Source: Phyllobates terribilis (taxonomy: Eukaryota). From it: a DNA stretch of 64,000 nt. Location of the stretch: the NCBI RefSeq assembly GCF_046119375.1, contig NW_027362768.1:185628001-185692000 (forward strand). The letters run 5' to 3'. Made by a program: the position numbers and the translations under genes. A model generated the notes under the pieces. That model saw nothing but the letters and a program-made list of their open reading frames with translations, was not told where the DNA came from and ran no database searches. Each line of letters starts with the position of its first letter. Position 1 is the stretch's first letter. Positions 12,900 through 64,000 of the stretch are shown piece after piece.

Positions 12900-15800
12900 A
12901 GCCAGCCTCCATCACACACAGCACCGGTGACCTGCCAGCCCTCACCACACACAGCACAGGGAACCTGTCAGCCCTCATCACACACAGCACCGGGAACCTG
13001 TCAGCCCCCATCACACACAGCACCGGGAACCTGTCAGCCCTCATCACACACAGCACCGGGAACCTGTCAGCCCTCATCACACACAGCTCGGGAACCTGTC
13101 AGCCCTCATCACACACAGCACCGGGAACCTGTCAGCCCTCATCACACACAGCACCGGGAACCTGTCAGCCCCAATCACACACAGCACTGGTGACCTGCCA
13201 GCCCCAATCACACACTGCACCGGGGACCTGTCAGCCCCCATCACACACAGCACAGGGGACCTGTCAGCCCCCATCACACACTGTACCGGGGACCTGTCAG
13301 CCTCCATCACACACAGCACAGATGACCTGTCAGCCTCCATCACACACAGCACCGGTGACCTGCCAGCCCCCATCACACACCACACAGATGACCTGTCAGC
13401 CTCCATCACACACCACACAGATGACCTGTCAGCCTCCATCACACACCACACAGATGACCTGTCAGCCTCCATCACACACCACACAGATGACCTGTCAGCC
13501 TCCATCACACACCACACAGATGACCTGTCAGCCTCCATCACACACAGCACCGGTGACCTGCCAGCCCCCATCACACGCCACACAGATGACCTGTCAGCCC
13601 CCATCACACACCACACAGATGACCTGTCAGCCTCCATCACACACCACACAGATGACCTGTCAGCCTCCATCACACACTGCACCGGGGACCTGTCAGCCCC
13701 CATCACACACAGCTCTGGGGACCTGTCAGACCCCATCACACACTGCACCGGGAACCTGTCAGCCCCCATCACACACACAGCACTGGGGACCTGTCAGCCC
13801 CCATCACACACACAGCACTGGGGACCTGTCAGCCCCCATCACACACACAGCACTGGGGACCTGTCAGCCCCATCACACACACAGCACTGATGACCTCTCA
13901 GCCCCCATCACACACAGCACTGGTGTGGTGACCTGCCAGCCACCATCACACACAGAACTGGGGACCTGCCAGCCCCCATCACACACAGCACCGGGGACCT
14001 GCCAGTCTTCATCACACACAGCACTGGGGATCTGTCAAATCCCATCACACACAGCATCGGGAACCTGTCAGCCCCCATCACACACAGCACCGGGGACCTG
14101 CCAGTCCCCGTCACACACAGCACCGGGGACCTGCCAGTCCTCATCACACACAGAACAGGGGACCAGTCAGCCCCCATCACACACAGAACAGGGGACCTGT
14201 CAGCCCCCATCACACACAGCAACGGGGACCTGTCAGCCCCCATCACACACAGCACAGGGGATCTGTCAGCCCCCATCACACACTGCACTGGTGACCTGTC
14301 TGCCTCCATCACACACAACACTGGTGACCTGTCAGCCCCCATCACACACAGCACCAGTGTCCTGTCAGCCCCCATCACACACAGCACAGGGGACCTGTCA
14401 GCCCCCATCACACACACTGCACTGATGACCTGTCAGCCCCCATCACACACAGCACTGGTGACCTATCAGCCCCCATCACACACAGCACCGGGGACCTATC
14501 AGCCCCCATCACACACAGCACTGGGGACCTGTCAGCCCTCATCACACACAGCACAGGGGACCTGTCAGCCCCCATCACACACAGCACTGGTGACCTGTCA
14601 GCCTCTATCACACACACCACTGGGGACCTGTCAGCCTCCATCACACACACCACTGGGGACCTGTCAGCCCCCATCACACACACAGCACTGGTGACCTGTC
14701 AGCCCCCATCACACACAGCACTGGAGAACTGTCAGCCTCCATCACACACAGCACTGGTGACCTGTCAGCCCCCATCACACACTGCACAGGGGACCTGTCA
14801 GCCCCTATCACACACAGCACTGGGGACCTGTCAGCCTCCATCACACACAGCACTGGGGACCTGTCAGCCCCCATCACACACAGCACAGATGACCTGTCAG
14901 CCTCCATCACACACAGCACTGGTGACCTGCCAGCCCCAATCACACACTGCACCGGGGACCTGTCAGCCCCCATCACACACAGCACTGGGGACCTGTCAGC
15001 CTCCATCACCCACCACACAGATGACCTGTCAGCCTCCATCACACACAGCACCGGTGACCTGCCAGCCCCAGTCACACACTACACCGGGGACCTGTCAGCC
15101 CCCATCACACACTGCACCGGGGACCTGTCAGCCCCCATCACACACACAGCACTGGGGACCTGTCAGCCCCCATCACACACACAGCACTGGGGACCTGTCA
15201 GCCCCCATCACACACACAGCACTGGGGACCTGTCAGCCCCATCACACACACAGCACTGATGACCTCTCAGCCCCCATCACACACAGCACTGGTGTGGTGA
15301 CCTGCCAGCCACCATCACACACAGCACTGGTTACCTGCCAGCCCCCATCACACACAGCACCGGGGACCTGCCAGTCCTCATCACACACAGCACTGGGGAT
15401 CTGTCAAATCCCATCACACACAGCATCGGGAACCTGTCAGCCCCCATCACACACAGCACCGGGGACCTGCCAGTCCCCGTCACACACAGCACCGGGGACC
15501 TGCCAGTCCTCATCACACACAGAACAGGGGACCAGTCAGCCCCCATCACACACAGAACAGGGGACCTGTCAGCCCCCATCACACACAGCAACGGGGACCT
15601 GTCAGCCCCCATCACACACAGCACAGGGGATCTGTCAGCCCCCATCACACACAGCAACGGGGACCTGTCAGCCCCCATCACACACAGCACAGGGGATCTG
15701 TCAGCCTCCATCACACACAACACTAGTGACCTGTCAGCCCCCATCACACACAGCACCAGTGTCCTGTCAGCCCCCATCACACACAGCACAGGGGACCTGT

Positions 15801-18800
15801 CAGCCCCTATCACACACAGCACTGGTGACCTATCAGCCCCCATCACACACAGCACCGGGGACCTATCAGCCCCCATCACACACAGCACTGGGGACCTGTC
15901 AGCCCTCATCACACACAGCACAGGGGACCTGTCAGCCCCCATCACACACAGCACTGGTGACCTGTCAGCCTCCATCACACACACCACTGGGGACCTGTCA
16001 GCCTCCATCACACACACCACTGGGGACCTGTCAGCCCCCATCACACACACAGCACTGGTGACCTGTCAGCCCCCATCACACACAGCACTGGAGAACTGTC
16101 AGCCTCCATCACACACAGCACTGGTGACCTGTCAGCCCCCATCACACACTGCACAGGGGACCTGTCAGCCCCTATCACACACAGCACTGGGGACCTGTCA
16201 GCCCCCATCACACACAGCACTGGGGACCTGTCAGCCCCCATCACACACAGCACAGATGACCTGTCAGCCTCCATCACACACAGCACTGGTGACCTGCCAG
16301 CCCCAATTACACACTGCACCAGGGACCTGTCAGCCCCCATCACACACAGCACTGGGGATCTGTCAGCCCCCATCACACACAGCACTGGTGACCTGCCAGC
16401 CCCAATCACACACTGCACCGGGGACCTGTCAGCCCCCATCACACACAGCACTGGGGATCTGTCAGCCCCCATCACACACAGCACTGGGGACCTGTCAGCC
16501 CCCATCACACACAGCACTGGGGACCTGTCAGCCCCCATCACACACTGCACAGGGGACCTGTCAGCCCCTATCACACACAGCACTGGGGACCTGTCAGCCC
16601 CTATCACACACAGCACTGGGGACCTGTCAGCCCCCATCACACACTGCACAGGGGACCTGTCAGCCCCTATCACACACTGCACCGGGGACCTGTCAGCCCC
16701 CATCACACTCAGCACTGGGGACCTGTCAGCCCCCATCACACACTGCACAGGGGACCTGTCAGCCCCTATCACACACAGCACTGGGGACCTGTCAGCCCCC
16801 ATCACACACAGCACTGGGGACCTGTCAGCCCCCATCACACACTGCACAGGGGACCTGTCAGCCCCTATCACACACTGCACCGGGGACCTGTCAGCCCCCA
16901 TCACACACAGCACTGGGGACCTGTCAGCCCCCATCACACACTGCACAGGGGACCTGTCAGCCCCTATCACACACAGCACTGGGGACCTGTCAGCCCCCAT
17001 CACACACAGCACTGGGGACCTGTCAGCCCCCATCACACACTGCACCGGGGACCTGTCAGCCCCCATCACACACAGCACTGGGGACCTGTCAGCCCCCATC
17101 ACACACTGCATAGGGGACCTGTCAGCCCCTATCACACACAGCACTGGGGACCTGTCAGCCCCCATCACACACAGCACTGGGGACCTATCAGCCCCCATCA
17201 CACACAGCACTGGTGACCTGTCAGCCTCCATCACACACAGCATCAGGGACCTGTCAGCCTCCATCACACACAGCACTGGGGACCTGTCAGCCCCCATCAC
17301 ACACACCACTGGGCAACTGTCAGCCTCCATAACACACAGCACTGAGGACCTGTCAGCCCCCGTCACACACAGCACTGGGGACCTGTCAGCCTCCATCGCA
17401 CACAGCACTGGGGACCTGTCAGCCCCCATCACACACTGTACCGGGGACCTGTCAGCCTCCATCACACACAGCACAGCTCTGGGGACCTGTCAGCCCCCAT
17501 CACACACAGCACTGGTGACCTGAAAGCCCCTATCACACACAGCACCAGGGACCTGCCAGCTCCCATCACACACAGCACTGGTGACCTGCCAGCCCCCATC
17601 ACACACAGCACCAGGGACCTGCCAGCTCCCATCACACACTGCACTGGTGACCTGTCAGCCCCCATCACACACAGCATCGGGGACCTGTCAGCCCCCATCA
17701 CACACAGCACTGGGGACCTGTCAGCCCTCATCACACACAGCACAGGGGACCTGTCAGCCCCCATCACACACAGCACTGGTGACCTGTCAGCCTCCATCAC
17801 ACACACCACTGGGGACCTGTCAGCCTCCATCACACACACCACTGGGGACCTGTCAGCCCCCATCACACACACAGCACTGGTGACCTGTCAGCCCCCATCA
17901 CACACAGCACTGGAGAACTGTCAGCCCCCATCACACACAGCACTGGGGACCTGTCAGCCCCCATCACACACAGCACAGATGACCTGTCAGCCTCCATCAC
18001 ACACAGCACTGGTGACCTGCCAGCCCCAATCACACACTGCACCGGGGACCTGTCAGCCCCCATCACACACAGCACTGGGGATCTGTCAGCCCCCATCACA
18101 CACAGCACTGGGGACCTGTCAGCCCCCATCACACACTGCACAGGGGACCTGTCAGCCCCTATCACACACTGCACCGGGGACCTGTCAGCCCCCATCACAC
18201 ACAGCACAGGGGACCTGTCAGCCCCTATCACACACAGCACTGGGGACCTGTCAGCCCCCATCACACACAGCACTGGGGACCTGTCAGCCCCCATCACACA
18301 CTGCACAGGGGACCTGTCAGCCCCTATCACACACTGCACCGGGGACCTGTCAGCCCCCATCACACACTGCACAGGGGACCTGTCAGCCCCTATCACACAC
18401 AGCACTGGGGACCTGTCAGCCCCCATCACACACAGCACTGGGGACCTGTCAGCCCCTATCACACACTGCACCGGGGACCTGTCAGCCCCCATCACACACA
18501 GCACTGGGGACCTGTCAGCCCCCATCACACACTGCACAGGGGACCTGTCAGCCCCTATCACACACAGCACTGGGGACCTGTCAGCCCCCATCACACACAG
18601 CACTGGGGACCTGTCAGCCCCCATCACACACTGCACCGGGGACCTGTCAGCCCCCATCACACACAGCACTGGGGACCTGTCAGCCCCCATCACACACTGC
18701 ACAGGGGACCTGTCAGCCCCTATCACACACAGCACTGGGGACCTGTCAGCCCCCATCACACACAGCACTGGGGACCTATCAGCCCCCATCACACACAGCA

Positions 18801-21800
18801 CTGGTGACCTGTCAGCCTCCATCACACACAGCATCAGGGACCTGTCAGCCTCCATCACACACAGCACTGGGGACCTGTCAGCCCCCATCACACACACCAC
18901 TGGGCAACTGTCAGCCTCCATCACACACAGCACTGGGGACCTGTCAGCCCCCATCACACACAGCACTGGGGACCTGTCAGCCTCCATCGCACACAGCACT
19001 GGGGACCTGTCAGCCCCCATCACACACTGTACCGGGGACCTGTCAGCCTCCATCACACACAGCACAGCTCTGGGGACCTGTCAGCCCCCATCACACACAG
19101 CACTGGTGACCTGAAAGCCCCTATCACACACAGCACCAGGGACCTGCCAGCTCCCATCACACACAGCACTGGTGACCTGCCAGCCCCCATCACACACAGC
19201 ACCAGGGACCTGCCAGCTCCCATCACACACTGCACTGGTGACCTGTCAGCCCCCATCACACACAGCATCGGGGACCTGTCAGCCTCCATCACACACAGCA
19301 CTGGGGACCTGTCAGCCCCCATCACACACAGCACAGGGGACCTGCCAGCCACCATCACACACAGCACAGGGGACCTGCCAGCCACCATCACACACAGCAC
19401 TGGGGACCTGTCAGCCCCCATCACACACAGCACTGGGGACCTGTCAGCCCCCATCACACACAGCACAGGGGACCTGTCAGCCCCAATCACACACAGCACA
19501 GGGGACCTGCCAGCCCCCATTACACACAGCACAGGGGACTTGCCAGCCCCCATCACACACAGCACTGGGGACCTGTCAGCCCTCATCACACACAGCACGG
19601 GTGACCTGTCAGCCTCCATCACACACAGCACCGGGGACCTGTCAGCCCCCATCACATACAGCACTGGGGACCTGTCAGCCCTCATCACACACAGCACCGG
19701 GGACCTGTCAGCCCCCATCACACACAGCACTGGTGACCTGTCAGCCTCCATCACACACAGCACTGGAGACCTGTCAGCCTCCATCACACACAGCACTGGT
19801 GACCTGCCAGCCCCCATGACACACAGCACTGGGGATCTGTCAAATCCCATCACACACAGCATCGGGAACCTGTCAGCCCCCATCACACACAGCACCGGGG
19901 ACCTGCCAGTCCCCGTCACACACAGCACCGGGGACCTGCCAGTCCTCATCACACACAGAACAGGGGACCAGTCAGCCCCCATCACACACAGCACAGGGGA
20001 CCTGTCAGCCCCCATCACACACAGCACAGGGACCTGCCAGCCCCCATCACACACAGCACTGGTGACCTGTCAGCCCCCATCACACACAGCACAGGGGACC
20101 TGTCAGCCCCCATCACACACACCACTGGGGACCTGTCAGCCCCCATCACACACAGCATTGGGGACCTGTCAGCCCCCATCACACACAGCACTGGGGACCT
20201 GTCAGCCCCCATCACACACAGCATTGGGGACCTGTCAGCCCCCATCACACACAGCACCGGGGACCAGTCAGCCCCCATCACACACAGCACAGGGGACCTG
20301 TCAGCCCCCATCACACACAGCACAGGGACCTGCCAGCCCCCATCACACACAGCACTGGTGACCTGTCAGCCCTCATCACACACAGCACAGGGGACCTGTC
20401 AGCCCCCATCACACACAGCATTGGGGACCTGTCAGCCCCCATCACACACAGCACTGGGGACCTGTCAGCCCCCATCACACACAGCACTGGTGACCTGTCA
20501 GCCCCCATCACACACAGCACAGGGGACCTGTCAGCCCCCATCACACACAGCACAGGGGAGCTGCCAGTCCTCATCACACACAGAACAGGGGACCAGTCAG
20601 CCCCCATCACACACAGCACAGGGGACCTGTCAGCCCCCATCACACACAGCACAGGGGACCTGTCAGCCCCCATCACACACAGCATTGGGGACCTGTCAGC
20701 CCCCATCACACACAGCATTGGGGACCTGTCAGCCCCCATCACACACAGCACTGGGGACCTGTCAGCCCCCATCACACACAGCATTGGGGACCTGTCAGCG
20801 CCCATCACACACAGCATCGGGGACCTGTCAGCCCCCATCACACACAGCACCGGGGACCTGTCAGCCTCCATCACACACAGCACTGGGGACCTGTCAGCCC
20901 CCATCACACACTGCACCGGGGACCTGTCAGCCCCCATCACACACAGCACAGGGGACCTGTCAGCCCCTATCACACACAGCACTGGGGACCTGTCAGCCCC
21001 CATCACACACAGCACTGGGGACCTGTCAGCCCCCATCACACACAGCACTGGGGACCTGTCAGCCCCCATCACACACTGCACAGGGGACCTGTCAGCCCCT
21101 ATCACACACTGCACCGGGGACCTGTCAGCCCCCATCACACACTGCACAGGGGACCTGTCAGCCCCTATCACACACAGCACTGGGGACCTGTCAGCCCCCA
21201 TCACACACAGCACTGGGGACCTGTCAGCCCCTATCACACACTGCACCGGGGACCTGTCAGCCCCCATCACACACTGCACAGGGGACCTGTCAGCCCCCAT
21301 CACACACTGCACAGGGGACCTGTCAGCCCCCATCACACACAGCACTGGGGACCTGTCAGCCCCCATCACACACTGCACCGGGGACCTGTCAGCCCCCATC
21401 ACACACAGCACTGGGGACCTGTCAGCCCCCATCACACACTGCACAGGGGACCTGTCAGCCCCTATCACACACAGCACTGGGGACCTGTCAGCCCCCATCA
21501 CACACAGCACTGGGGACCTATCAGCCCCCATCACACACAGCACTGGTGACCTGTCAGCCTCCATCACACACAGCATCAGGGACCTGTCAGCCTCCATCAC
21601 ACACAGCACTGGGGACCTGTCAGCCCCCATCACACACACCACTGGGCAACTGTCAGCCTCCATCACACACAGCACTGGGGACCTGTCAGCCCCCATCACA
21701 CACAGCACTGGGGACCTGTCAGCCTCCATCGCACACAGCACTGGGGACCTGTCAGCCCCCATCACACACTGTACCGGGGACCTGTCAGCCTCCATCACAC

Positions 21801-24800
21801 ACAGCACAGCTCTGGGGACCTGTCAGCCCCCATCACACACAGCACTGGTGACCTGAAAGCCCCTATCACACACAGCACCAGGGACCTGCCAGCTCCCATC
21901 ACACACAGCACTGGTGACCTGCCAGCCCCCATCACACACAGCACCAGGGACCTGCCAGCTCCCATCACACACTGCACTGGTGACCTGTCAGCCCCCATCA
22001 CACACAGCATCGGGGACCTGTCAGCCTCCATCACACACAGCACTGGGGACCTGTCAGCCCCCATCACACACAGCACAGGGGACCTGCCAGCCACCATCAC
22101 ACACAGCACAGGGGACCTGCCAGCCACCATCACACACAGCACTGGGGACCTGTCAGCCCCCATCACACACAGCACTGGGGACCTGTCAGCCCCCATCACA
22201 CACAGCACAGGGGACCTGTCAGCCCCAATCACACACAGCACAGGGGACCTGCCAGCCCCCATTACACACAGCACAGGGGACTTGCCAGCCCCCATCACAC
22301 ACAGCACTGGGGACCTGTCAGCCCTCATCACACACAGCACGGGTGACCTGTCAGCCTCCATCACACACAGCACCGGGGACCTGTCAGCCCCCATCACATA
22401 CAGCACTGGGGACCTGTCTGCCCTCATCACACACAGCACCGGGGACCTGTCAGCCCCCATCACACACAGCACTGGTGACCTGTCAGCCTCCATCACACAC
22501 AGCACTGGAGACCTGTCAGCCTCCATCACACACAGCACTGGTGACCTGCCAGCCCCCATGACACACAGCACTGGGGATCTGTCAAATCCCATCACACACA
22601 GCATCGGGAACCTGTCAGCCCCCATCACACACAGCACCGGGGACCTGCCAGTCCCCGTCACACACAGCACCGGGGACCTGCCAGTCCTCATCACACACAG
22701 AACAGGGGACCAGTCAGCCCCCATCACACACAGCACAGGGGACCTGTCAGCCCCCATCACACACAGCACAGGGACCTGCCAGCCCCCATCACACACAGCA
22801 CTGGTGACCTGTCAGCCCCCATCACACACAGCACAGGGGACCTGTCAGCCCCCATCACACACACCACTGGGGACCTGTCAGCCCCCATCACACACAGCAT
22901 TGGGGACCTGTCAGCCCCCATCACACACAGCACTGGGGACCTGTCAGCCCCCATCACACACAGCATTGGGGACCTGTCAGCCCCCATCACACACAGCACC
23001 GGGGACCAGTCAGCCCCCATCACACACAGCACAGGGGACCTGTCAGCCCCCATCACACACAGCACAGGGACCTGCCAGCCCCCATCACACACAGCACTGG
23101 TGACCTGTCAGCCCTCATCACACACAGCACAGGGGACCTGTCAGCCCCCATCACACACAGCATTGGGGACCTGTCAGCCCCCATCACACACAGCACTGGG
23201 GACCTGTCAGCCCCCATCACACACAGCACTGGTGACCTGTCAGCCCCCATCACACACAGCACAGGGGACCTGTCAGCCCCCATCACACACAGCACAGGGG
23301 AGCTGCCAGTCCTCATCACACACAGAACAGGGGACCAGTCAGCCCCCATCACACACAGCACAGGGGACCTGTCAGCCCCCATCACACACAGCACAGGGGA
23401 CCTGTCAGCCCCCATCACACACAGCATTGGGGACCTGTCAGCCCCCATCACACACAGCATTGGGGACCTGTCAGCCCCCATCACACACAGCACTGGGGAC
23501 CTGTCAGCCCCCATCACACACAGCATTGGGGACCTGTCAGCGCCCATCACACACAGCATCGGGGACCTGTCAGCCCCCATCACACACAGCACCGGGGACC
23601 TGTCAGCCTCCATCACACACAGCACTGGGCACCTGTCAGCCTCCATCGCACACAGCACTGGGGACCTGTCAGCCCCCATCACACACTGTACCGGGGACCT
23701 GTCAGCCCCCATCACACACAGCACAGGGGACCTGTCAGCCCCCATCACACACAGCATTGGGGACCTGTCAGCCTCCATCACACACAGCACAGGGGACCTG
23801 TCAGCCCCCATCACACACAGCATTGGGGACCTGTCAGCCTCCATCACACACAGCACAGGGGACCTGTCAGCCCCCATCACACATAGCACTGGGGACCTGT
23901 CAGCCCCCATCACACACAGCATTGGGGACCTGTCAGCCCCCATCACACACAGCACCGGGGACCTGTCAGCCCCCATCACACACAGCACCGGGGACCTGTC
24001 AGCCCCCATCACACACAGCACAGGGGACCTGTCAGCCCCAATCACACACAGCACTGGGGACCTGTCAGCCCCCATCACACACAGCACAGGGGACCTGTCA
24101 GCCCCAATCACACACAGCACTGGGGACCTGTCAGCCCCCATCACACACAGCACCGGGGACCTGTCAGCCCCCATCACACACAGCACCGGGGACCTGTCAG
24201 CCCCCATCACACACAGCACAGGGGACCTGTCAGCCCCAATCACACACAGCATTGGGGACCTGTCAGCCCCCATCACACACAGCACAGGGGACCTGTCAGC
24301 CCCAATCACACACAGCACAGGGGACCTGTCAGCCCCCATCACACACAGCATTGGGGACCTGTCAGCCCCCATCACACACAGCACAGGGGACCTGTCAGCC
24401 CCCATCACACACAGCACCGGGGACCTGTCAGCCCCCATCACACACAGCACCGGGGACCTGTCAGCCCCCATCACACACAGCACAGGGGACCTGTCAGCCC
24501 CCATCACACACTGTACCGGGGACCTGTCAGCCCCCATCACACACAGCACCGGGGACCTGTCAGCCCCCATCACACACAGCATTGGGGACCTGTCAGCCCC
24601 CATCACACACAGCACAGGGGACCTGTCAGCCCCCATCACACACAGCACAGGGGACCTGTCAGCCCCCATCACACACAGCATTGGGGACCTGTCAGCCTCC
24701 ATCACACACAGCACAGGGGACCTGTCAGCCCCCATCACACACAGCATTGGGAACCTGTCAGCCTCCATCACACACAGCACAGGGGACCTGTCAGCCCCCA

Positions 24801-25640
24801 TCACACACAGCATTGGGGACCTGTCAGCCCCCATCACACACAGCACCGGGGACCTGTCAGCCCCCATCACACACAGCACCGGGGACCTGTCAGCCCCCAT
24901 CACACACAGCACAGGGGACCTGTCAGCCCCAATCACACACAGCACTGGGGACCTGTCAGCCCCCATCACACACAGCACCGGGGACCTGTCAGCCCCCATC
25001 ACACACAGCACCGGGGACCTGTCAGCCCCCATCACACACAGCACAGGGGACCTGTCAGCCCCAATCACACACAGCATTGGGGACCTGTCAGCCCCCATCA
25101 CACACAGCACAGGGGACCTGTCAGCCCCAATCACACACAGCACAGGGGACCTGTCAGCCCCCATCACACACAGCATTGGGGACCTGTCAGCCCCCATCAC
25201 ACACAGCACAGGGGACCTGTCAGCCCCCATCACACACAGCACCGGGGACCTGTCAGCCCCCATCACACACAGCACCGGGGACCTGTCAGCCCCCATCACA
25301 CACAGCACAGGGGACCTGTCAGCCCCCATCACACACTGTACCGGGGACCTGTCAGCCCCCATCACACACAGCACCGGGGACCTGTCAGCCCCCATCACAC
25401 ACAGCATTGGGGACCTGTCAGCCCCCATCACACACAGCACAGGGGACCTGTCAGCCCCCATCACACACAGCACCGGGGACCTGTCAGCCCCCATCACACA
25501 CAGCACAGGGGACCTGTCAGCCCCCATCACACACAGCACTGGTGACCTGTCAGCCCCCATCACACACAGCACTGGTGACCTGTCAGCCCCCATCACACAC
25601 AGCACCGGGGACCTGTCAGCCCCCATCACACACAGCACTG
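12900..25640. repeat. 33-bp minisatellite array, about 385 units, with higher-order duplications
   Basis: Unit ACCTGTCAGCCCCCATCACACACAGCACTGGGG; lies wholly in cryz-B intron 12781-26200. Confidence 0.97.
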
Positions 25641-53834: not shown

Positions 53835-54599
53835 CTTACCACCCCCTGGTGTATAACCTCCACCCGCCATGCTGTCTGCCTTTATAAACATGTGACAGAA
53901 CGGCCGGTGGTGCAGAACTCACTGATACCAGCTCTCTCAACATCACCAAGCACAATGTCGAGCGTCGGATGGAGTGGTGTAAAGCCGCCACCACTGGACT
54001 CTGGAGGAGACGTGTCCTGTGCAGTGATGGATCACACTTCTCTATCTGCGTCTGATGGAGGAGTCGGGGTTTGGTGATTCCAGGAGGACGTTACCCCCTG
54101 ACTGCATTGTGCCGCTGTACAGATGGTGGAGGAGGATAATGCTATGGGCTGTTATCAGGGGGCGGCCGCGGACCCTCACCTCCAGTGATGGGAAATCTTC
54201 ATCTTCACCACAAGACATTGTGGATAATTGTAGTTTCAGCTTTGTGGGAACAGTTTGGGGTTCGTCCTTATCTGTCCCCCATCACTGCGTCCAGTGCACA
54301 AGCTCCATACAGACATGGAGGGAACATGTGCGGCCGCACAGAGCCCGGACCCTAGCCCCATCCTATAATGGAGATTGTGAGCCCGGACCCCCCTAACATC
54401 AGGGTCTGACCCCACAAATGATCTTCTGGATGAAGGGGCAAAAATTCCCACAGACGTCTCCAACATCTTATAGAAATCCCAGAAGAGCAAGAGCCGTTAT
54501 ATCTGCAGAGGACGACTCCATATTAATGTCTGCGGATTGAGGGTCAGAAAAGCTCCTTGGGGGCATGTAGAGGGTGCACATACTTTTGCACATGTAATG
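53835..54599 (+). mobile_element. 5'-truncated decayed Tc1 relic, same family as 6031-7598
   Basis: Long colinear similarity with 6580-7600; ends CATACTTTTGCACATGTAATG|TA. Confidence 0.7.
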
Positions 54600-55045
54600 T
54601 ATATAGATCCTGTATACTGCAAAAATATAAAGAGCTAATGATGAAACATTAAATGCCATACTGTCTGATAATCCAGAATGTCCTACACTGCAGCTTTTCT
54701 TGGATCTGTGTGTGTATATGTATATGTATGTATATATATATATATATATATATACACACTGCTCAAAAAAATAAAGGGAACAACACAATGTAACTCCAAG
54801 TAAATCAAACTTCTGTGAAATCGAACTGTCCACTTAGGAAGCAACACTGATTGACAATCAATTTCACATGCTGTTGTGCAAATGGAATAGACAATAGGTG
54901 GAAATTATTGGCAATTATCAAGACACCCTCAATAAAGGAGTGGTTCTGCAGGTGGGGACCACAGACCACATCTCAGTACCAATGCTTTCTGGCTGATGTT
55001 TTGGTCACTTTTGAATGTTGGTTGTGCTTTCACACTCGTGGTAGC

Positions 55046-55849
55046 ATGAGATGGACTCTACAACCCACAGAAGTTGCTCAGGTAGTGCAGCTCATCCAGG
55101 ACGGCAGATCAATGCGAGCTGTGGCAAGAAGGTTTGCTGTGTCTGTCAGCGTAGTGTCCAGAGGCTGGAGGCGCTACCAGGAGACAGGCCAGTACACCAG
55201 GAGACGTGGAGGGGGCCGTAGGAGGGCAAGAACCCAGCAGCAGGACCGCTACCTCCGCCTTTGTGCAAGGAGGAACAGGAGGAGCACTGCCAGAGCCCTG
55301 CAAAATGACCTCCAGCAGGCCACAAATGTGCATGTGTCTGCACAAACGGTTAGAAACCAACTCCATGAGGGTGGTATGAGGGCCCGACGTCCACAGATGG
55401 GGGTTGTGCTCACAGCCCAACACCGTGCAGGATGCTTGGCATTTGCCACAGAACACCAGGATTGGCAAAGTCACCACTGGCGCCCTGTGCTCTTCACAGA
55501 TGAAAGCAGGTTCACACTGAGCACATGTGACAGACGTGACAGAGTCTGGAGACGCCGTGGAGAGCGATCTGCTGCCTGCAACATCCTTCACCATGACCGG
55601 TTTGGCAGTGGGTCAGTAATGGTGTGGGGTGACATTTCTTTGGAGGGCCGCACAGCCCTCCATGTGCTCGCCAGAGGTAGCCTGACTGCCATTAGGCATC
55701 GAGATGAGATCCTCAGACCCCTTGTGAGACCATATGCTGGTGTGGTTGGCCCTGGGTTCCTCCTAATGCAGGACAATGCCAGACCTCATGTGGCTGGAGT
55801 GTGTCAGCAGTTCCTGCAAGATGAAGGCATTGAAGCTATAGACTGGCCC
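55046..55849 (+). pseudogene. Tc1 transposase, interrupted; catalytic E replaced by Q after the insertion (LNPIQHIW)
   Basis: FTDESRF and LMQDNARPH motifs; continues at 57190 as AHSPDLNPIQ. Confidence 0.88.
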
Positions 55850-57181
55850 CAGGGGTGGATTAAGAGTAGCAAGGGCCCCGGGCAGTTTAGAAGGTGCGGG
55901 CCCCCACACACACACACACCCACCTGATGTATCACGTGACATGTCACACGATCCCCTGTGATAGATCATGTGATATTTCACGTGAAATTAATTTGGCACA
56001 ATATTAATTATAATAATTTTTTTTAGGCTGTGTGCCCACTATGCGTTTAAGCGTTTCCACAGCGGCAATTCCGCTGCAGAAACGCTTAAAAAACGCTTGG
56101 TAGAAGGTGTGCAATGTTCCCCAATGATAATCCGCATGTGCTGTGCACATGCTGCGGAAATTTCCGCTGCGGATTATCATTGCGGAAAAATCCACAGCAC
56201 TACCAATTATTTTGCGGAAGCGCTGCGTTTTCGCTGCCATTGACTTGCATTAGATCGCATGATATCCGCTTCACTGCATCTGTACATGCGGAATACATGC
56301 GTTTCAATGTGCGGATGGTACCCGGGTGTGGAGGACAGGAGACTCTCCTCCGGACCCGGGTACCATAGAACCTGTAAAAAAAGAATAAAATAAAAGATAG
56401 CGGGAGGCCGCACGGCGCCATCTATACACAGCGGGAGGCCGCACGGCGCCACCTATACACAGCGGGAGGCCACACGGCGCCATCTATACACAGCAGGGGG
56501 CCGCACGGTGCCATCTATACACAGCGGGAGGCCGCACGATGCCATCTATACACAGCAGGAGGCCGCACGATGCCATCTATACACAGCGGGAGGCCGCACG
56601 GCGCCATCTATACACCGCAGGGGGCCGCATGGCGCCATCTATACACAGCAGGAGGCCGCACGGCGCCATCTATACAGAGCGGGAGGCCGCACGGCGCCCC
56701 CCCCAGAGATAGCAGGAGGCCGCACGGCGCCATCTATACTCAGCAGGAGGCCGCACGCAGTCATGCACACACACAAACATATACAGACATATACATACAC
56801 GCATAAACACATTTGAAACACAAAAATACATATAAACAGACATCACACAATGATATCTGCCTGCACACACACACACTCACCATCCCCCGGCTTGGCTCCA
56901 GTCCTCCTTCTCTTTTCCGGTGCAGCACTGCAGGCCGGGCGCCCACTGCGTGACGTCACAGCTAGGAGACACGGCCTCGCACAGGGCCGTGTCTCCTAGC
57001 AGTGACGCGGCCGGGCCAGCACAGGGGAAATTAAGTGCTGCAGTGCTGGCCTGGCCGAAGAAGAAGCCCCCCCCGCCACTGTCTGCCGGTATGTGCCGCG
57101 GCGCCGCACATATAACGAGGACCATCTGGCCATAGACACCCCGGCGGTAGCCCAGATTGCCCTCATTATAATCCGCCTATG
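55850..57181. mobile_element. Non-autonomous hAT-type element, 1332 bp
   Basis: 8-bp TSD ACTGGCCC (55842-55849 / 57182-57189); 13-bp imperfect TIRs CAGGGGTGGATTA / CATAGGCGGATTA. Confidence 0.85.
56400..56760. repeat. 31-bp minisatellite inside the hAT element
   Basis: CGGGAGGCCGCACGGCGCCATCTATACACAG. Confidence 0.9.
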
Positions 57182-57325
57182 ACTGGCCCGCCCATTCCCC
57201 AGACCTGAATCCGATTCAGCACATCTGGGACATCATGTCTCGCTCCATCCACCACAGACTGTCCAGGAGTTGGCGGATGCTTTAGTCCAGGTCTGGGAGG
57301 AGATCCCACAGGAGACCATCTGCAA

Positions 57326-60300
57326 CCTCATCAGGAGCATGCCCAGGCGTTGTTGGGAGGTCATACAGTCACGTGGAGGCCACACACAATACTCAGCCTC
57401 ATCAGGAGCATGCCCAGGCGTTGTAGAGAGGTCATACAGGCACGTGGAGGCCACACACAATACTCAGCCTCATCAGGAGCATGCCCAGGCGTTGTAGGGA
57501 GGTCATACAGGCACGTGGAGGCCACACACAATACTCAGCCTCATCAGGAGCATGCCCAGGCGTTGTAGGGAGGTCATACCGGCACGTGGAGGCCGCACAC
57601 AATACTCAGCCTCATCAGGAGCATGCCCAGGCGTTGTAGGGAGGTCATACAGGCACGTGGAGGCCACACACAATACTCAGCCTCATCAGGAGCATGCCCA
57701 GGCGTTGTAGGGAGGTCATACAGGCACGTGGAGGCCACACACAATACTCAGCCTCATCAAGAGCATGCCCAGGCGTTGTAGGGAGGTCATACCGGCACGT
57801 GGAGGCCGCACACAATACTCAGCCTCATCAGGAGCATGCCCAGGCGTTGTAGGGAGGTCATACCGGCACGTGGAGGCCACTCACAATACTCAGCCTCATC
57901 AGGAGCATGCCCAGGCGTTGTAGGGAGGTCATACCGGCACGTGGAGGCCGCACACAATACTCAGCCTCATCAGGAGCATGCCCAGGCGTTGTAGGGAGGT
58001 CATACCGGCACGTGGAGGCCACACACAATACTCAGCCTCATCAGGAGCATGCCCAGGTGTTGTAGGGAGGTCATACAGGCACGTGGAGGCCACACACAAT
58101 ACTCAGCCTCATCAGGAGCATGCCCAGGCATTGTAGGGAGGTCATACCGGCACGTGGAGGCCACACACAATACTCAGCCTCATCAGGAGCATGCCCAGGC
58201 GTTGTAGGGAGGTCATACAGGCACGTGGAGGCCACACACAATACTCAGCCTCATCAGGAGCATGCCCAGGTGTTGTAGGGAGGTCATACAGGCACGTGGA
58301 GGCCACACACAATACTCCGCCTCATCAGGAGCATGCCCAGGCGTTGTAGGGAGGTCATACAGGCACGTGGAGGCCACACACAATACTCAGCCTCATCAGG
58401 AGCATGCCCAGGCGTTGTAGGGAGGTGATACCGGCACGTGGAGGCCGCACACAATACTCAGCCTCATCAGGAGCATGCCCAGGCGTTGTAGGGAGGTCAT
58501 ACCGGCACGTGGAGGCCGCACACAATACTCAGCCTCATCAGGAGCATGCCCAGGCGTTGTAGGGAGGTCATACTGTCACGTGGAGGCCGCACACAATACT
58601 CAGCCTCATCAGGAGCATGCCCAGGCGTTGTAGGGAGGTCATACAGTCACGTGGAGGCCACACACAATACTCAGTCTCATCAGGAGCATGCCCAGGCGTT
58701 GTAGGGAGGTCATACAGGCACGTGGAGGCCACACACAATACTCAGCCTCATCAGGAGCATGCCCAGGTGTTGTAGGGAGGTCATACAGGCACGTGGAGGC
58801 CACACACAATACTCCGCCTCATCAGGAGCATGCCCAGGCGTTGTAGGGAGGTCATACAGGCACGTGGAGGCCACACACAATACTCAGCCTCATCAGGAGC
58901 ATGCCCAGGCGTTGTAGGGAGGTGATACCGGCACGTGGAGGCCGCACACAATACTCAGCCTCATCAGGAGCATGCCCAGGCGTTGTAGGGAGGTCATACC
59001 GGCACGTGGAGGCCGCACACAATACTCAGCCTCATCAGGAGCATGCCCAGGCGTCGTAGGGAGGTCATACTGTCACGTGGAGGCCGCACACAATACTCAG
59101 CCTCATCAGGAGCATGCCCAGGCGTTGTAGGGAGGTCATACAGTCACGTGGAGGCCACACACAATACTCAGTCTCATCAGGAGCATGCCCAGGCGTTGTA
59201 GGGAGGTCATACAGGCACGTGGAGGCCACACACAAGACTCAGCCTCATCAAGAGCATGCCCAGGCGTTGTAGGGAGGTCATACAGACACATGGAGGCCAC
59301 ACACAATACTGAGCCTCATCAGGAGCATGCCCAGGCGTTGTAGGGAGGTCATACCGGCACGTGGAGGCCGCACACAATACTCAGCCTCATCAGGAGCATG
59401 CCCAGGCGTTGTAGGGAGGTCATACAGTCACGTGGAGGCCACACACAATACTCAGCCTCATCAGGAGCATGCCCAGGCGTTGTAGGGAGGTCATACAGGC
59501 ATGTGGAGGCCACACACAATACTCAGCCTCATCAGGAGCATGCCCAGGTGTTGTAGGGAGGTCATACAGGCACGTGGAGGCCACACACAATACTCAGCCT
59601 CATCAGGAGCATGCCCAGGCGTTGTAGGGAGGTCATACAGACACGTGGAGGCCACACACAATACTCAGCCTCATCAGGAGCATGCCCAGGCGTTGTAGGG
59701 AGGTCATACCGGCACGTGGAGGCCGCACACAATACTCAGCCTCATCAGGAGCATGCCCAGGCATTGTAGGGAGGTCATACCGGCACGTGGAGGCCGCACA
59801 CAATACTCAGCCTCATCAGGAGCATGCCCAGGCGTTGTAGGGAGGTCATACCGGCACGTGGAGGCCGCACACAGTGCTCAGCCTCATCAGGAGCATGCCC
59901 AGGCGTTGTAGGGAGGTCATACAGTCACGTGGAGGCCACACACAATACTCAGCCTCATCAGGAGCATGCCCAGGCGTTGTAGGGAGGTCATACAGGCATG
60001 TGGAGGCCACTCACAATACTCAGCCTCATCAGGAGCATGCCCAGGTGTTGTAGGGAGGTCATACAGGCACGTGGAGGCCACACACAATACTCCGCCTCAT
60101 CAGGAGCATGCCCAGGCGTTGTAGGGAGGTCATACAGGCACGTGGAGGCCACACACAATACTCAGCCTCATCAGGAGCATGCCCAGGCGTTGTAGGGAGG
60201 TCATACAGGCACGTGGAGGCCACACACAATACTCAGCCTCATCAGGAGCATGCCCAGGCGTTGTAGGGAGGTCATACAGGCACGTGGAGGCCACACACAA

Positions 60301-62086
60301 TACTCAGCCTCATCAGGAGCATGCCCAGGCGCTGTAGGGAGGTCATACAGGCACGTGGAGGCCACACACAATACTCAGCCTCATCAGGAGCATGCCCAGG
60401 TGTTGTAGGGAGGTCATACAGGCACGTGGAGGCCACACACAATACTCAGCCTCATCAGGAGCATGCCCAGGCGTTGTAGGGAGGTCATACAGGCACGTGG
60501 AGGCCACACACAATACTCAGCCTCATCAGGAGCATGCCCAGGCGTTGTAGGGAGGTCATACAGGCACGTGGAGGCCACACACAATACTCAGCCTCATCAG
60601 GAGCATGCCCAGGCGTTGTAGGGAGGTCATACAGGCACATGGAGGCCACACACAATACTGAGCCTCATCAGGAGCATGCCCAGGCGTTGTAGGGAGGTCA
60701 TACAGGCACGTGGAGGCCACACACAATACTCAGCCTCATCAGGAGCATGCCCAGGCGTTGTAGGGAGGTCATACAGTCACGTGGAGGCCACACACAATAC
60801 TCAGTCTCATCAGGAGCATGCCCAGGCGTTGTAGGGAGGTCATACAGGCACGTGGAGGCCACACACAAGACTCAGCCTCATCAAGAGCATGCCCAGGCGT
60901 TGTAGGGAGGTCATACAGACACGTGGAGGCCACACACAATACTCAGCCTCATCAGGAGCATGCCCAGGCGTTGTAGGGAGGTCATACCGGCACGTGGAGG
61001 CCGCACACAATACTCAGCCTCATCAGGAGCATGCCCAGGCGTTGTAGGGAGGTCATACCGGCACGTGGAGGCCGCACACAATACTCAGCCTCATCAGGAG
61101 CATGCCCAGGCATTGTAGGGAGGTCATACCGGCACGTGGAGGCCGCACACAATACTCAGCCTCATCAGGAGCATGCCCAGGCGTTGTAGGGAGGTCATAC
61201 CGGCACGTGGAGGCCGCACACAATACTCAGCCTCATCAGGAGCATGCCCAGGCGTTGTAGGGAGGTCATACAGTCACGTGGAGGCCACACACAATACTCA
61301 GCCTCATCAGGAGCATGCCCAGGCGTTGTAGGGAGGTCATACAGGCATGTGGAGGCCACACACAATACTCAGCCTCATCAGGAGCATGCCCAGGTGTTGT
61401 AGGGAGGTCATACAGGCACGTGGAGGCCACACACAATACTCAGCCTCATCAGGAGCATGCCCAGGCGTTGTAGGGAGGTCATACAGACACGTGGAGGCCA
61501 CACACAATACTCAGCCTCATCAGGAGCATGCCCAGGCGTTGTAGGGAGGTCATACCGGCACGTGGAGGCCGCACACAATACTCAGCCTCATCAGGAGCAT
61601 GCCCAGGCGTTGTAGGGAGGTCATACCGGCACGTGGAGGCCGCACACAATACTCAGCCTCATCAGGAGCATGCCCAGGCATTGTAGGGAGGTCATACCGG
61701 CACGTGGAGGCCGCACACAATACTCAGCCTCATCAGGAGCATGCCCAGGCGTTGTAGGGAGGTCATACCGGCACGTGGAGGCCGCACACAATACTCAGCC
61801 TCATCAGGAGCATGCCCAGGCGTTGTAGGGAGGTCATACAGTCACGTGGAGGCCACACACAATACTCAGCCTCATCAGGAGCATGCCCAGGCGTTGTAGG
61901 GAGGTCATACAGGCATGTGGAGGCCACTCACAATACTCAGCCTCATCAGGAGCATGCCCAGGTGTTGTAGGGAGGTCATACAGGCATGTGGAGGCCACTC
62001 ACAATACTCAGCCTCATCAGGAGCATGCCCAGGCGTTGTAGGGAGGTCATACAGGCACGTGGAGGCCACACACAATACTCAGCCTC
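57326..62086 (+). repeat. 71-bp satellite, 67 units, derived from the transposase 3' end
   Basis: CCTCATCAGGAGCATGCCCAGGCGTTGTAGGGAGGTCATACAGGCACGTGGAGGCCACACACAATACTCAG encodes LIRSMPRRCREVIQARGGHTQY; span = 67x71+4. Confidence 0.96.
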
Positions 62087-62372
62087 GTTTTGACTTGTTT
62101 TAAGGACATTACATCAAAGTTGGATCAGCCTGTAGTGTGTTTTTCCACTTTAATTTTGGGGGTGACTCCAAATCCAGGCCTCCATTGGTTAATAAATGTG
62201 ATTTCCATTGATGATTTTTGTGTGATTTTGTTGTCAGCACATTCAACTTTGTACAGAACAAAGTATTCAATGAGAATATTTCATTCCTTCAGATCTAGGA
62301 TGTGGTATCTGAGTGTTCCCTTTATTTTTTTGAGCCGTGTATATATATATGTACACTGCAGCATATCTTGGG

Positions 62373-62416
<44 letters not shown>

Positions 62417-62419
<3 letters not shown>

Positions 62420-63516
62420 TACAGACCAAAAGTTTGGACACATCTTCTCATTTAAAGATTTTTCTGTATTTTCATGACTATGTAAATTGTACATTCACAC
62501 TGAAGGCATCAAAACTATGAATTAACACATGTGGAATTATATACTTAACTAAAAAGTGTGAAACAACTGAAAATATGTCTTATATTCTAGGTTCTTCAAA
62601 GTAGCCACCTTTTGCTTTGATGACTGCTTTGCACACTCTTGGCATTCTCTTGATGAGCTTCAAGAGGTAGTCACCGGAAATGGTCTTCACTTCACAGGTG
62701 TGCTCTGTCAGGTTTAATAAGTGGGATTTCTTGCCTTATAAATGGGGTTGGGACCATCAGTTGTGTTGTGCAGAAGTCTGGTGGATACACAGCTGATAGT
62801 CCTACTGAATAGACTGTTAGAATTTGTATTATGGCAAGAAAAAAGCAGCTAAGTAAAGAAAAACGAGTGGCCATCATTACTTTAAGAAATGAAGGTCAGT
62901 CAGTCTGAAAAATTGGGAAAACTTTGAAAGTGTCCCCAAGTGCAGTTGCAAAAACCATCAAGCGCTGCAAAGAAACTAGCTCACATGAGGACCGCCCCAG
63001 GAAAGGAAGACCAAGAGTCACCTCTGCTTCTGAGGATAAATTTATCCGAGTCACCAGCCTCAGAAATCGCAGGTTAACATCAGCTCAGATTAGAGACCAG
63101 GTCAATGCCACACAGAGTTCTAGCAGCAGACACATCTCTTCAACAACTGTTAAGAGGAGACTTTGTGCAGCAGGCCTTCATGGTAAAATAGCTGCTAGGA
63201 AACCACTGCTAAGGACAGGCAACAAGCAGAAGAGACTTGTTTGGGCTAAAGAACACAATGAATGGACATTAGACCAGTGGAAATCTGTGCTTTGGTCTGA
63301 TGAGTCCAGATTTGAGATCTTTGGTTCCAACCACCGTGTCTTTGTGCGACACAGAAAAGGTGAACGGATGGACTCTACATGCCTGGTTCCCACCGTGAAG
63401 CATGGAGGAGGAGGTGTGATGGTGTGGGGGGGCTTTGCTGGTGACACTGTTGGGGATTTATTCAAAATTGAAGGCATACTGAACCAGCATGGCTACCACA
63501 GCATCTTGCAGCGGCA
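62417..63516 (+). mobile_element. Second DD38E Intruder-type Tc1 copy, interrupted; nonsense codon at codon 26
   Basis: Near-identical to 8537-12624 without the LTRs; ATG 62831; GTC TGA AAA; homology stops after CAGCGGCATG. Confidence 0.88.
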
Positions 63517-64000
63517 TGACCGTGTACGGCCAACCCGGGTTCCACCGTTTAACCTGTTCCTCCCATTTTCCAGCACTCACCTTTTCCCACAAATAAAAAC
63601 ACTGCACCTGTAATTTCTTTGGATAAATTTGGCCACAGCTGCCATTTTATTAACAAACAACATTAACACATTAACAGTGTTATAAATAAATAAGAAGGGA
63701 GGGTTCTTGGAGTTAAAAATTAGATCTGGCATAAATTAAACCGAACTGGAACCACCATATTACCCTCAGCCGTCCATCACCAGCTCAAGAGCACCAAAAG
63801 CTCCCAGGGTAAAACCCCGTCCAGAGCCCAAAAACCAAATGTCAGATCACCCCGCTCAATTAACCAATTGGCTGTAATTTTAACCAAATTATTCCCACCG
63901 ACACTTCTGTGCCAACTCCAAGAACCCCACCCCCCACCAAGCCACTGCGACAAACACCCTACCTCATTTTTCTTTATTTTTTATTCACTTTTTTATTTTT
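63517..64000 (-). mobile_element. Unidentified insertion, possibly the 3' end of an LTR on minus
   Basis: Abrupt junction starting TG on plus (CA end on minus), AATAAA about 130 bp inside on minus; other end outside the window. Confidence 0.35.

What the first reader, a model, noticed from the sequence alone, without database searches (positions are those of the whole stretch)
57326..62086. Birth of a satellite from the last 71 coding bases of a Tc1 transposase, still inside both TIRs
Seen: exactly 67 indel-free 71-bp units encoding the C-terminal LIRSMPRRCREVIQARGGHTQY, bounded by the microhomology CCTCA(T) that occurs at both ends of this segment. Variants repeat at a 7-unit (497 bp) spacing (ACTCCGC at about 58314 and 58811; ORFs 59501/59998) and an 8-unit spacing (61347/61915). 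The 3' UTR and right TIR resume normally. Inference: microhomology-seeded duplication then rapid amplification. Because both TIRs survive, the 4.8-kb satellite could be mobilised in trans, and it could yield transposase-matching small RNAs that silence the family.
Basis: partly seen in the sequence, partly recalled or inferred. Interest (0 to 1): 0.7.

Follow-up and report, generated by a model that had tools for sequence, protein, structure and literature searches.

The report
Tc1 transposon tail grown into minisatellite
A dead Tc1 "jumping gene" in this (probably frog) genome carries 67 head-to-tail copies of the last 71 bases of its own transposase gene; the same repeat is abundant elsewhere in this genome and in a second species, so this is an ordinary, probably functionless case of transposon-derived repeat DNA, not a birth caught at this site.

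Summary
At 57326-62086 there are 67 indel-free 71-bp units. They lie inside a 7.6-kb Tc1 element whose terminal inverted repeats are both present. The units show local 7-, 8- and 26-unit higher-order blocks.

A single-copy reference of the same family (L001) has CCTCAT at two sites exactly 71 bp apart. Those two sites are the array boundaries. Each unit holds 1 base, 22 codons, the stop codon (here mutated to TCA) and 1 more base.

"Birth at this locus" is not supported.
- In contigs of public runs, the unit has about 5 times the summed word depth of the adjacent Tc1 3'UTR in organism A and in a second organism C. A third organism, B, shows no excess.
- Contigs bridge the unit-to-unit junction in both A and C.
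- The c41/g56 variant makes up a third of this array but falls below the 5% listing threshold in the organism A DNA run laid (X2).
- The scan had already noted 71-bp Tc1-tail arrays on three other pieces of this genome (s1-215430, s1-241609, s1-241587).

My best reading has three steps. A microhomology-seeded duplication arose in a Tc1 subfamily. Copies with few units spread. This copy then expanded in place by unequal exchange.

The mobilisation and small-RNA ideas remain untested. This is a new member of a known kind, closest to miDNA4 of Xenopus. Interest is low to moderate.

The parts
54757..54782 (+). Left terminal inverted repeat of the Tc1 element (26 nt kept). Just inside it, 8 nt are missing relative to reference L001. 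CA stands where the TA target duplication would be, at the edge of a TA microsatellite.
55046..55849 (+). Open N-terminal 268 codons of the Tc1 transposase (HTH_Tnp_Tc3_2 plus the start of DDE_3). It is about 91% identical to 341-aa fish and frog Tc1 transposases.
55850..57180 (.). Nested 1.33-kb insertion of another element that splits the transposase gene. It is flanked by a GACTGGCCC duplication (55841-55849 and 57181-57189) and carries its own array of 11.5 copies of a 31-bp unit at 56399-56757.
57181..57325 (+). C-terminal transposase remnant upstream of the array. A 16-bp frameshifting deletion lies at 57249/57250, flanked by CACCA in the reference.
57326..62086 (+). The array: 67 units of 71 bp plus CCTC. 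Each unit holds the last 22 codons, the stop triplet (TCA in 65 units, TGA in units 28 and 47) and 1 base of 3'UTR. There are local 7-, 8- and 26-unit repeat blocks and no open frame longer than 80 aa.
62079..62081 (+). Stop triplet of the last unit, here TCA. The family majority is TGA in organisms B and C. In organism A the position is mixed.
62087..62311 (+). 3'UTR of the Tc1 element, colinear with L001. It has five private differences from the family majority, at 62087, 62198, 62287, 62305 and 62309.
62312..62339 (+). Right terminal inverted repeat (28 nt). It has one mismatch to the left repeat and to L001, and is followed by TA and a TA microsatellite.

Best explanation
This is one copy of a dispersed subfamily of a fish/frog Tc1 transposon whose transposase tail has become a 71-bp minisatellite.

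Step 1 (inferred). In some ancestral copy, slippage or microhomology-mediated repair between two CCTCAT hexamers 71 bp apart duplicated the last 22 codons and the stop.

Step 2 (inferred). Copies carrying a few units spread to many loci, most simply by ordinary cut-and-paste mobilisation by the family's transposase. The added length was then small.

Step 3 (shown by the sequence). At this locus the array grew in place to 67 units by unequal exchange or replication slippage of multi-unit blocks. This produced private variants and 7-, 8- and 26-unit higher-order blocks.

The host copy is dead. It has a nested 1.33-kb insertion, a 16-bp frameshift deletion and a lost stop. The array cannot encode protein. 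It most likely has no function.
For: Origin and boundaries:
- Alignment to the single-copy reference L001 places the unit exactly between two CCTCAT sites 71 bp apart.
- The element is a Tc1 by its domains and by about 91% identical transposases.

Dispersal (contigs of public runs):
- Summed word depth in the unit against the 3'UTR is 5.2-5.8 million against about 1.05 million in organism A (run X2), and about 256,000 against 30,000-57,000 in organism C (run X7). In organism B (run X5) it is 94,000-112,000 against 150,000-260,000, so there is no excess.
- At 61999, 13 nt upstream of a unit junction, depth is 0.98 million in A and 40,000 in C, but only 718 in B.
- X2 record 1 and X7 record 25 bridge the junction with 32 or more letters on each side.
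- A loose end at 62086 continues as ATCAGGAGCA, which is the start of the next unit.
- Junction variants absent from this window occur in X2 (table 5c).

Local growth:
- c41/g56 units make up 22 of the 67 units here but fall below the 5% listing threshold in X2.
- Exact blocks of 379-475 bp occur at multi-unit offsets, beyond what shuffles of unit order give.

Common descent:
- In A, about 81% of depth just before a junction (62009) reads TCA. Contigs that continue into the UTR fit mostly TGA. Arrays in C read TGA.
- L001 has 73 other direct-repeat pairs of 6 bp or more at 20-150 bp spacing, so repeated use of this one pair by chance is unlikely.

Earlier scan notes list three more 71-bp Tc1-tail arrays, one of them titled as lying inside a TIR-intact element.
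Against: - All runs were Logan contigs. The tool warns that summed contig depth is not a copy number, and no single-copy baseline was available. The flank bins had depth 0-421.
- I could not read any other array-bearing locus. Shared markers, distinct flanks and two-unit intermediates were therefore not checked.
- Arrays in organism C carry TGA and those in A mostly TCA. That also fits independent births in the two lineages.
- Nothing at this locus shows whether the element arrived with units already present.
- Copy number here was not checked with spanning reads.
Confidence: 0.6

Rival explanations
1. Recurrent independent births. The CCTCAT pair is a slippage hot spot, so many resident Tc1 copies have each made their own 71-bp array in an array-prone genome, with no transposition of array-bearing copies.
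For: - The genome is very rich in minisatellites. About 25 kb of this 64-kb window is tandem arrays.
- Earlier notes report several different Tc1-derived arrays, with 33-bp and 32-bp units.
- Arrays in organism C are TGA-type and those in A are mostly TCA-type.
Against: - The reference element has 73 comparable direct-repeat pairs, and nothing marks this one as special.
- Most array-type word depth in A carries the derived TCA, while contigs that continue into the UTR fit mostly TGA. That points to a shared founder.
Confidence: 0.2
2. One reading: a de novo birth at this locus, unique or nearly unique, caught inside an otherwise ordinary Tc1 copy.
For: The structure is clean. The array sits exactly where the single unit should be, and the flanks are colinear with the reference.
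Against: - Junction words are abundant in organisms A and C.
- Junction-bridging contigs occur in a second organism.
- This array's main private variant is below 5% in the organism A DNA run laid, X2.
- The scan noted three more 71-bp arrays in the same genome.
Confidence: 0.05
3. The dispersal comes from one or a few very large 71-bp satellite blocks elsewhere, or from segmental duplication, and not from mobile elements. This locus would then be a small outlier or the source.
For: The unit-to-UTR depth ratio of about 5 could come from a few huge arrays.
Against: The earlier notes describe several separate small arrays, 19-34 units by my reckoning from their lengths, and one title places its array inside a TIR-intact Tc1 element. 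I did not verify this.
Confidence: 0.1
4. The array works as a source of transposase-matching small RNAs that silence the family. This adds to the structural explanations and does not compete with them.
For: A run of organism A guessed to be RNA (X6) holds unit words in excess over UTR words.
Against: - The RNA label is only a guess and DNA may be present in that run.
- Contigs give neither strand nor level.
- The array is a direct repeat with no inverted arrangement that would give double-stranded RNA.
- No small-RNA data were examined.
Confidence: 0.05

Closest known systems
miDNA4 of Xenopus tropicalis, a Tc1/mariner MITE with an internal tandem-repeat motif (Scalvenzi and Pollet, as described in PMC12628747, PMC9659126 and PMC12054243)
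   Same: - A frog Tc1/mariner-superfamily element bounded by inverted repeats.
- It carries an internal monomer present once or as arrays of variable copy number.
- The monomer is flanked by short direct repeats, proposed to drive array growth by replication or repair errors.
- The element is proposed to disperse the repeat.
   Different: - Here the monomer can be traced to the coding tail and stop codon of the transposase of a near full-length element, not to a pre-existing repeat captured by a short MITE.
- Variable copy number among loci rests on unverified scan notes.
Satellites derived from transposase or ORF segments of transposons, for example CficCl-61-40 from the Tnp2 transposase region of the CACTA-like Jozin element in Chenopodium, and HinfI/CR1 and PROsat/L1 ORF2 (table in PMC9659126)
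   Same: A piece of a transposon coding region is turned into the monomer of a tandem array.
   Different: - The superfamily and host differ.
- Here the parent element still surrounds the array, and the boundary microhomology is readable.
Xstir arrays derived from the Xmix MITE in Xenopus (Hikosaka and Kawahara, as described in PMC12628747)
   Same: A frog lineage-specific tandem repeat derived from an internal part of a DNA-transposon derivative. MITE, array and composite forms coexist.
   Different: A different element and a different proposed mechanism (stem-loop excision). The monomer has no coding origin.
Bari1 cluster in Drosophila melanogaster heterochromatin (cited in PMC9659126)
   Same: A Tc1-superfamily element found as a tandem array.
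   Different: In Bari1 whole elements are repeated about 80 times. Here a 71-bp internal segment is repeated.

Membership tests
Tc1-like DNA transposon (Tc1/mariner superfamily) | Transposase with paired-like HTH DNA-binding domains and a DDE catalytic domain | tested here: met
   Pfam HTH_Tnp_Tc3_2 at E 2e-20 (above the cutoff). DDE_3 at E 2e-5 (24.7 bits, just below the 28.6 cutoff because the domain is cut by the nested insertion). The open part is about 91% identical over 268 aa to 341-aa Tc1 transposases that carry both domains.
Tc1-like DNA transposon (Tc1/mariner superfamily) | Terminal inverted repeats at both ends | tested here: met
   The outer 26-28 nt match between the two ends with one mismatch, and match both ends of reference L001.
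Tc1-like DNA transposon (Tc1/mariner superfamily) | TA target-site duplication | tested here: inconclusive
   TA on the right and CA on the left, both at the edge of TA microsatellites, so the dinucleotide carries no information.
Transposon-internal tandem repeat / TE-derived minisatellite (miDNA4-like) | Head-to-tail units homologous to a segment that is single-copy in the parent element | tested here: met
   67 units against one copy in L001 at positions 1244-1314.
Transposon-internal tandem repeat / TE-derived minisatellite (miDNA4-like) | Short direct repeats flank the monomer in the parent | tested here: met
   CCTCAT at L001 positions 1244 and 1315. Position 62087 reads A in almost all family contigs.
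Transposon-internal tandem repeat / TE-derived minisatellite (miDNA4-like) | The same repeat occurs in many element copies at different loci, with variable unit number | tested here: inconclusive
   Junction words are abundant and junction-bridging contigs occur in two organisms. Other loci are known only from unverified scan notes, at 20 units and, by my reckoning from the noted lengths, about 19 and 34 units. No other locus could be read.
Satellite DNA in the strict sense (long homogeneous arrays, often heterochromatic) | Megabase-scale or chromosome-landmark arrays | not testable with these tools
   Only contig word depths were available. There was no genome-wide map or cytology.
piRNA or small-RNA source locus | Small RNAs map to the array, with antisense or dual-strand transcription | not testable with these tools
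   No small-RNA run was offered. X6 is only guessed to be RNA and is kept as contigs.

The most novel reading that the evidence does not exclude
A stop-loss (TCA) subfamily of this Tc1 acts as a mobile seed of minisatellites. Copies with a duplicated 71-bp tail transpose, and each then swells in place. In at least two frog species the tail repeat would then outnumber the transposon's own 3' ends several-fold. A measurable share of what is annotated as Tc1 in these giant genomes would really be array DNA.
Probability: 0.35. Interest if true: 0.45.

Novelty: new member of a known kind. Interest (0 to 1): 0.3.

Why it matters
This is a very legible example of how a piece of transposon coding sequence becomes tandem-repeat DNA. 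The parent element, the boundary microhomology and the later block duplications can all be read directly from the sequence.

If the dispersed-subfamily reading holds, it links transposon activity to minisatellite load in giant amphibian genomes. It would also matter for repeat annotation, because kilobases scored as Tc1 would be array. And it would matter for assembly quality at such loci.

It does not open a new kind of biology. The process is described in reviews and for Xenopus miDNA4.

Tried and rejected
I used a metagenome contig (L001) as the reference instead.

2. An exact scan of metagenome contigs for the unit-to-unit junction, allowing TGA or TCA, found nothing. The collection is not expected to hold frog DNA, so this says little.

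3. A protein word search with the 52-aa periodic array ORF found nothing. Short ORFs are probably not in that collection.

4. The search of earlier findings by sequence was blank.

5. A search of the window for other copies of the tail found only the 67 units.

6. I considered using depth for an absolute copy number and rejected it. All runs are contigs, and the unique flank has depth 0-421, so there is no single-copy baseline.

7. I did not lay reads on the whole array, because the tool turns away long repeats. Only 1.8 units plus the 3' end were laid.

8. I did not identify the host species myself. "Probably poison frog" comes from earlier scan notes only.
Full report
**Observation**

Tandem Repeats Finder reports one array at 57326-62086 with period 71, 67.1 copies, 96% matches and no indels. 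Cutting the stretch into 71-bp units gives 67 full units plus CCTC. There are 103 differences from the array consensus in 4757 positions, or 2.2%, and mean pairwise difference is 3.6%. A 19-mer from the unit occurs 67 times in the window, only inside the array, against 0.03 expected by chance.

- c69 in units 14 and 21.
- The ATG-creating t46 in units 31 and 38, 7 units apart.
- t46 in units 57 and 65, 8 units apart.

The higher-order structure is local, not global. Units 14-20 repeat as 21-27. Units 29-34 equal 55-60 exactly. Units 52-56 equal 60-64. The longest exact identities are 475 bp at an 8-unit offset, 451 bp at 26 units and 379 bp at 7 units. Among 500 shuffles of unit order, none gave a run of 6 identical units.

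**What surrounds the array**

The array lies in a 7,583-bp Tc1 element at 54757-62339.
- The open N-terminal 268 codons (55046-55849) hit HTH_Tnp_Tc3_2 and DDE_3. They are about 91% identical to 341-aa Tc1 transposases of salmonids and other fishes, with frog relatives at 84-87%.
- A metagenome contig, L001 (1577 nt), is a near-complete single-copy element of the same family. It is 91-95% identical over the aligned parts.
- Against L001, the window copy keeps both terminal inverted repeats: 26 nt on the left and 28 nt on the right, with one mismatch.

The copy is dead for three reasons:
- A 1.33-kb foreign insertion with a GACTGGCCC duplication splits the gene at 55850-57180.
- A 16-bp deletion at 57249/57250 shifts the frame.
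- The stop triplet reads TCA.

**Boundaries of the unit**

In L001 the hexamer CCTCAT occurs at positions 1244 and 1315, exactly 71 bp apart. The bases on either side of the two sites differ. These are the two array boundaries.

In the window the right-hand site now reads CCTCGT. Almost all contigs of the family read A at 62087, so the G is private to this copy.

The unit is therefore 1 base of the preceding codon, 22 codons (LIRSMPRRCREVIQARGGHTQY), the stop triplet and 1 base of 3'UTR. By simple probability (my own reasoning), a 6-bp match at the two ends of a random duplication has a chance of about 1 in 1000. A microhomology-seeded first duplication is therefore a sound inference.

Because 71 is not a multiple of 3 and one frame carries TAG, no frame stays open for more than 80 aa.

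**Is this locus the birthplace?**

The scan's notes gave the lead. Three other pieces of the same genome were noted with 71-bp arrays from a Tc1 transposase tail (s1-215430, s1-241609, s1-241587). Further notes describe 33-bp and 32-bp Tc1-derived arrays. These notes are unverified.

I tested the lead with public runs. All 24 runs on offer are Logan contigs. Organism A holds 0.69-0.72 of the sampled words. The other organisms hold 0.09-0.47; organisms B to G, at 0.31-0.47, are in the range I expect from unit-internal words alone.

I laid four runs on 61960-62376, which covers 1.8 units, the 3'UTR, the inverted repeat and the flank.

| Run (organism) | Summed word depth in the unit | Depth in the 3'UTR | Depth at 61999 |
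|---|---|---|---|
| X2 (A, DNA) | 5.2-5.8 million | about 1.05 million | 0.98 million |
| X7 (C) | about 256,000 | 30,000-57,000 | 40,000 |
| X5 (B) | 94,000-112,000 | 150,000-260,000 | 718 |

Position 61999 lies 13 nt upstream of a unit junction, in a unit that carries private variants. Contigs laid there are array-type. Further points from the same call:
- X2 record 1 (61980-62065) and X7 record 25 (61964-62061) bridge the junction with at least 32 letters on each side.
- A loose end at 62086 continues as the start of another unit.
- Table 5c shows junction variants in X2 that do not occur in this window.
- The c41/g56 unit type makes up 22 of the 67 units here, but it is not listed among differences at 5% or more in X2.

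The tool warns that summed contig depth is not a copy number, and there is no single-copy baseline. I therefore use only ratios and presence. Even so, the 71-bp repeat is clearly not confined to this locus. It occurs in a second lineage, C, whose Tc1 3'UTR differs at near-fixed positions (62192, 62278). It is rare or absent in B.

**Single origin or many?**

In organism A about 81% of depth just before a junction (62009) reads TCA. At 62080 the split between TGA (55%) and TCA fits contigs that continue into the UTR being mostly TGA and array-internal contigs being mostly TCA. Organisms B and C read TGA almost throughout. That makes TCA a marker of the array lineage in A, which favours descent of most A units from one founder.

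L001 also has 73 other direct-repeat pairs of 6 bp or more at 20-150 bp spacing. Repeated independent use of this one pair is therefore not expected without a hot spot.

Against a single origin, arrays in C are TGA-type. Either the origin predates the TCA change, or C made its own arrays. I could not read any other array-bearing locus, so the mode of spread stays inferred.

The most economical model is the one proposed for miDNA4 in Xenopus (PMC12628747, PMC9659126, PMC12054243). A seeded element spreads while it is still short, and arrays then grow locally. The private c41/g56 variant and the exact blocks of hundreds of bases at multi-unit offsets show local growth at this locus.

**Function**

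Nothing supports a function.
- The array is a direct repeat and cannot code for protein.
- The run guessed to be RNA (X6) holds unit words in excess. The label is a guess and contigs give neither strand nor level.
- Mobilisation of this particular 7.6-kb copy is possible in principle, since the repeats at both ends are present. From general knowledge of Tc1/mariner elements, transposition efficiency falls with length.

**Context and novelty**

About 25 kb of the 64-kb window is tandem arrays of 28-93-bp units, including a 12.7-kb array of a 33-bp unit. This genome makes such arrays readily.

Reviews list satellites born from internal and coding parts of transposons, microhomology-driven growth and dispersal by the transposon (PMC12628747, PMC9659126). 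In the strawberry poison frog a salmon-like Tc1 (Tc1-3_SSa-like) reaches tens of thousands of copies (PMC6278860). Whether that is this family was not tested, and I did not identify the host species myself.

Verdict: a real, well-preserved and ordinary transposon-derived minisatellite, dispersed and not newborn. It is a new member of a known kind.

**Limits**

- Copy number at this locus was not checked with spanning reads.

Noticed in passing
window 55850-57180: A nested 1.33-kb non-autonomous element sits inside the Tc1 gene. It is flanked by a 9-bp GACTGGCCC duplication and has weak terminal inverted similarity (CAGGGGTGGATTA... against ...TAATCCGCCTAT). It carries its own array of 11.5 copies of a 31-bp unit at 56399-56757. 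The duplication length suggests a hAT-like element, which I did not test.
   Followed up: partly
window 54685-54708 and 62353-62376: A 24-nt motif (ACACTGCAGC.T.TCTTGG.TCTG, 21 of 24 identical) occurs only twice in the window, once in each flank of the element. Each copy is followed by a TG/TA microsatellite and then a Tc1 end: this element on the left and a different Tc1 on the right. The cause is unexplained. It may be a duplicated target region.
   Followed up: partly
window 62338-62351 (loose ends at 62350): In organisms A and B many copies of this Tc1 family continue past the right inverted repeat into TA runs. The family either prefers TA microsatellites as targets or grows them from its TA duplication.
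   Followed up: no
window 62417-63530: A second Tc1-like element of another family begins here (end reads CAGTACAGACCAAAAGTTTGGACAC). Its transposase reading frame carries an in-frame stop and appears to break off at about 63530.
   Followed up: no
window 12903-25640 and other rows: There is a 12.7-kb array of a 33-bp unit (385 copies) and at least ten more minisatellites of 28-93-bp period. About 39% of the window is tandem arrays.
   Followed up: no
window 59311 and 60660 (units 28 and 47): Two of the 67 units read TGA, the ancestral stop, where the others read TCA. They also share a47. Unit 28 looks like a recombinant of the unit-47 and unit-51 types, which suggests gene conversion or crossover within the array.
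   Followed up: partly
window 57249/57250 against L001 columns 1164-1179 of alignment A2: The 16-bp deletion in the transposase remnant is flanked by CACCA in the reference. It is a second microhomology-bounded rearrangement in the same element.
   Followed up: yes
L001 (contig OIWO01016899.1, 1577 nt): A contig filed as metagenome is a near-complete vertebrate Tc1 element with both inverted repeats. It is presumably host or prey DNA in the sample.
   Followed up: no
window 54000-54640: A degenerate remnant that looks like a third Tc1-like transposase family lies just upstream of the element. I judged this by eye and ran no search.
   Followed up: no
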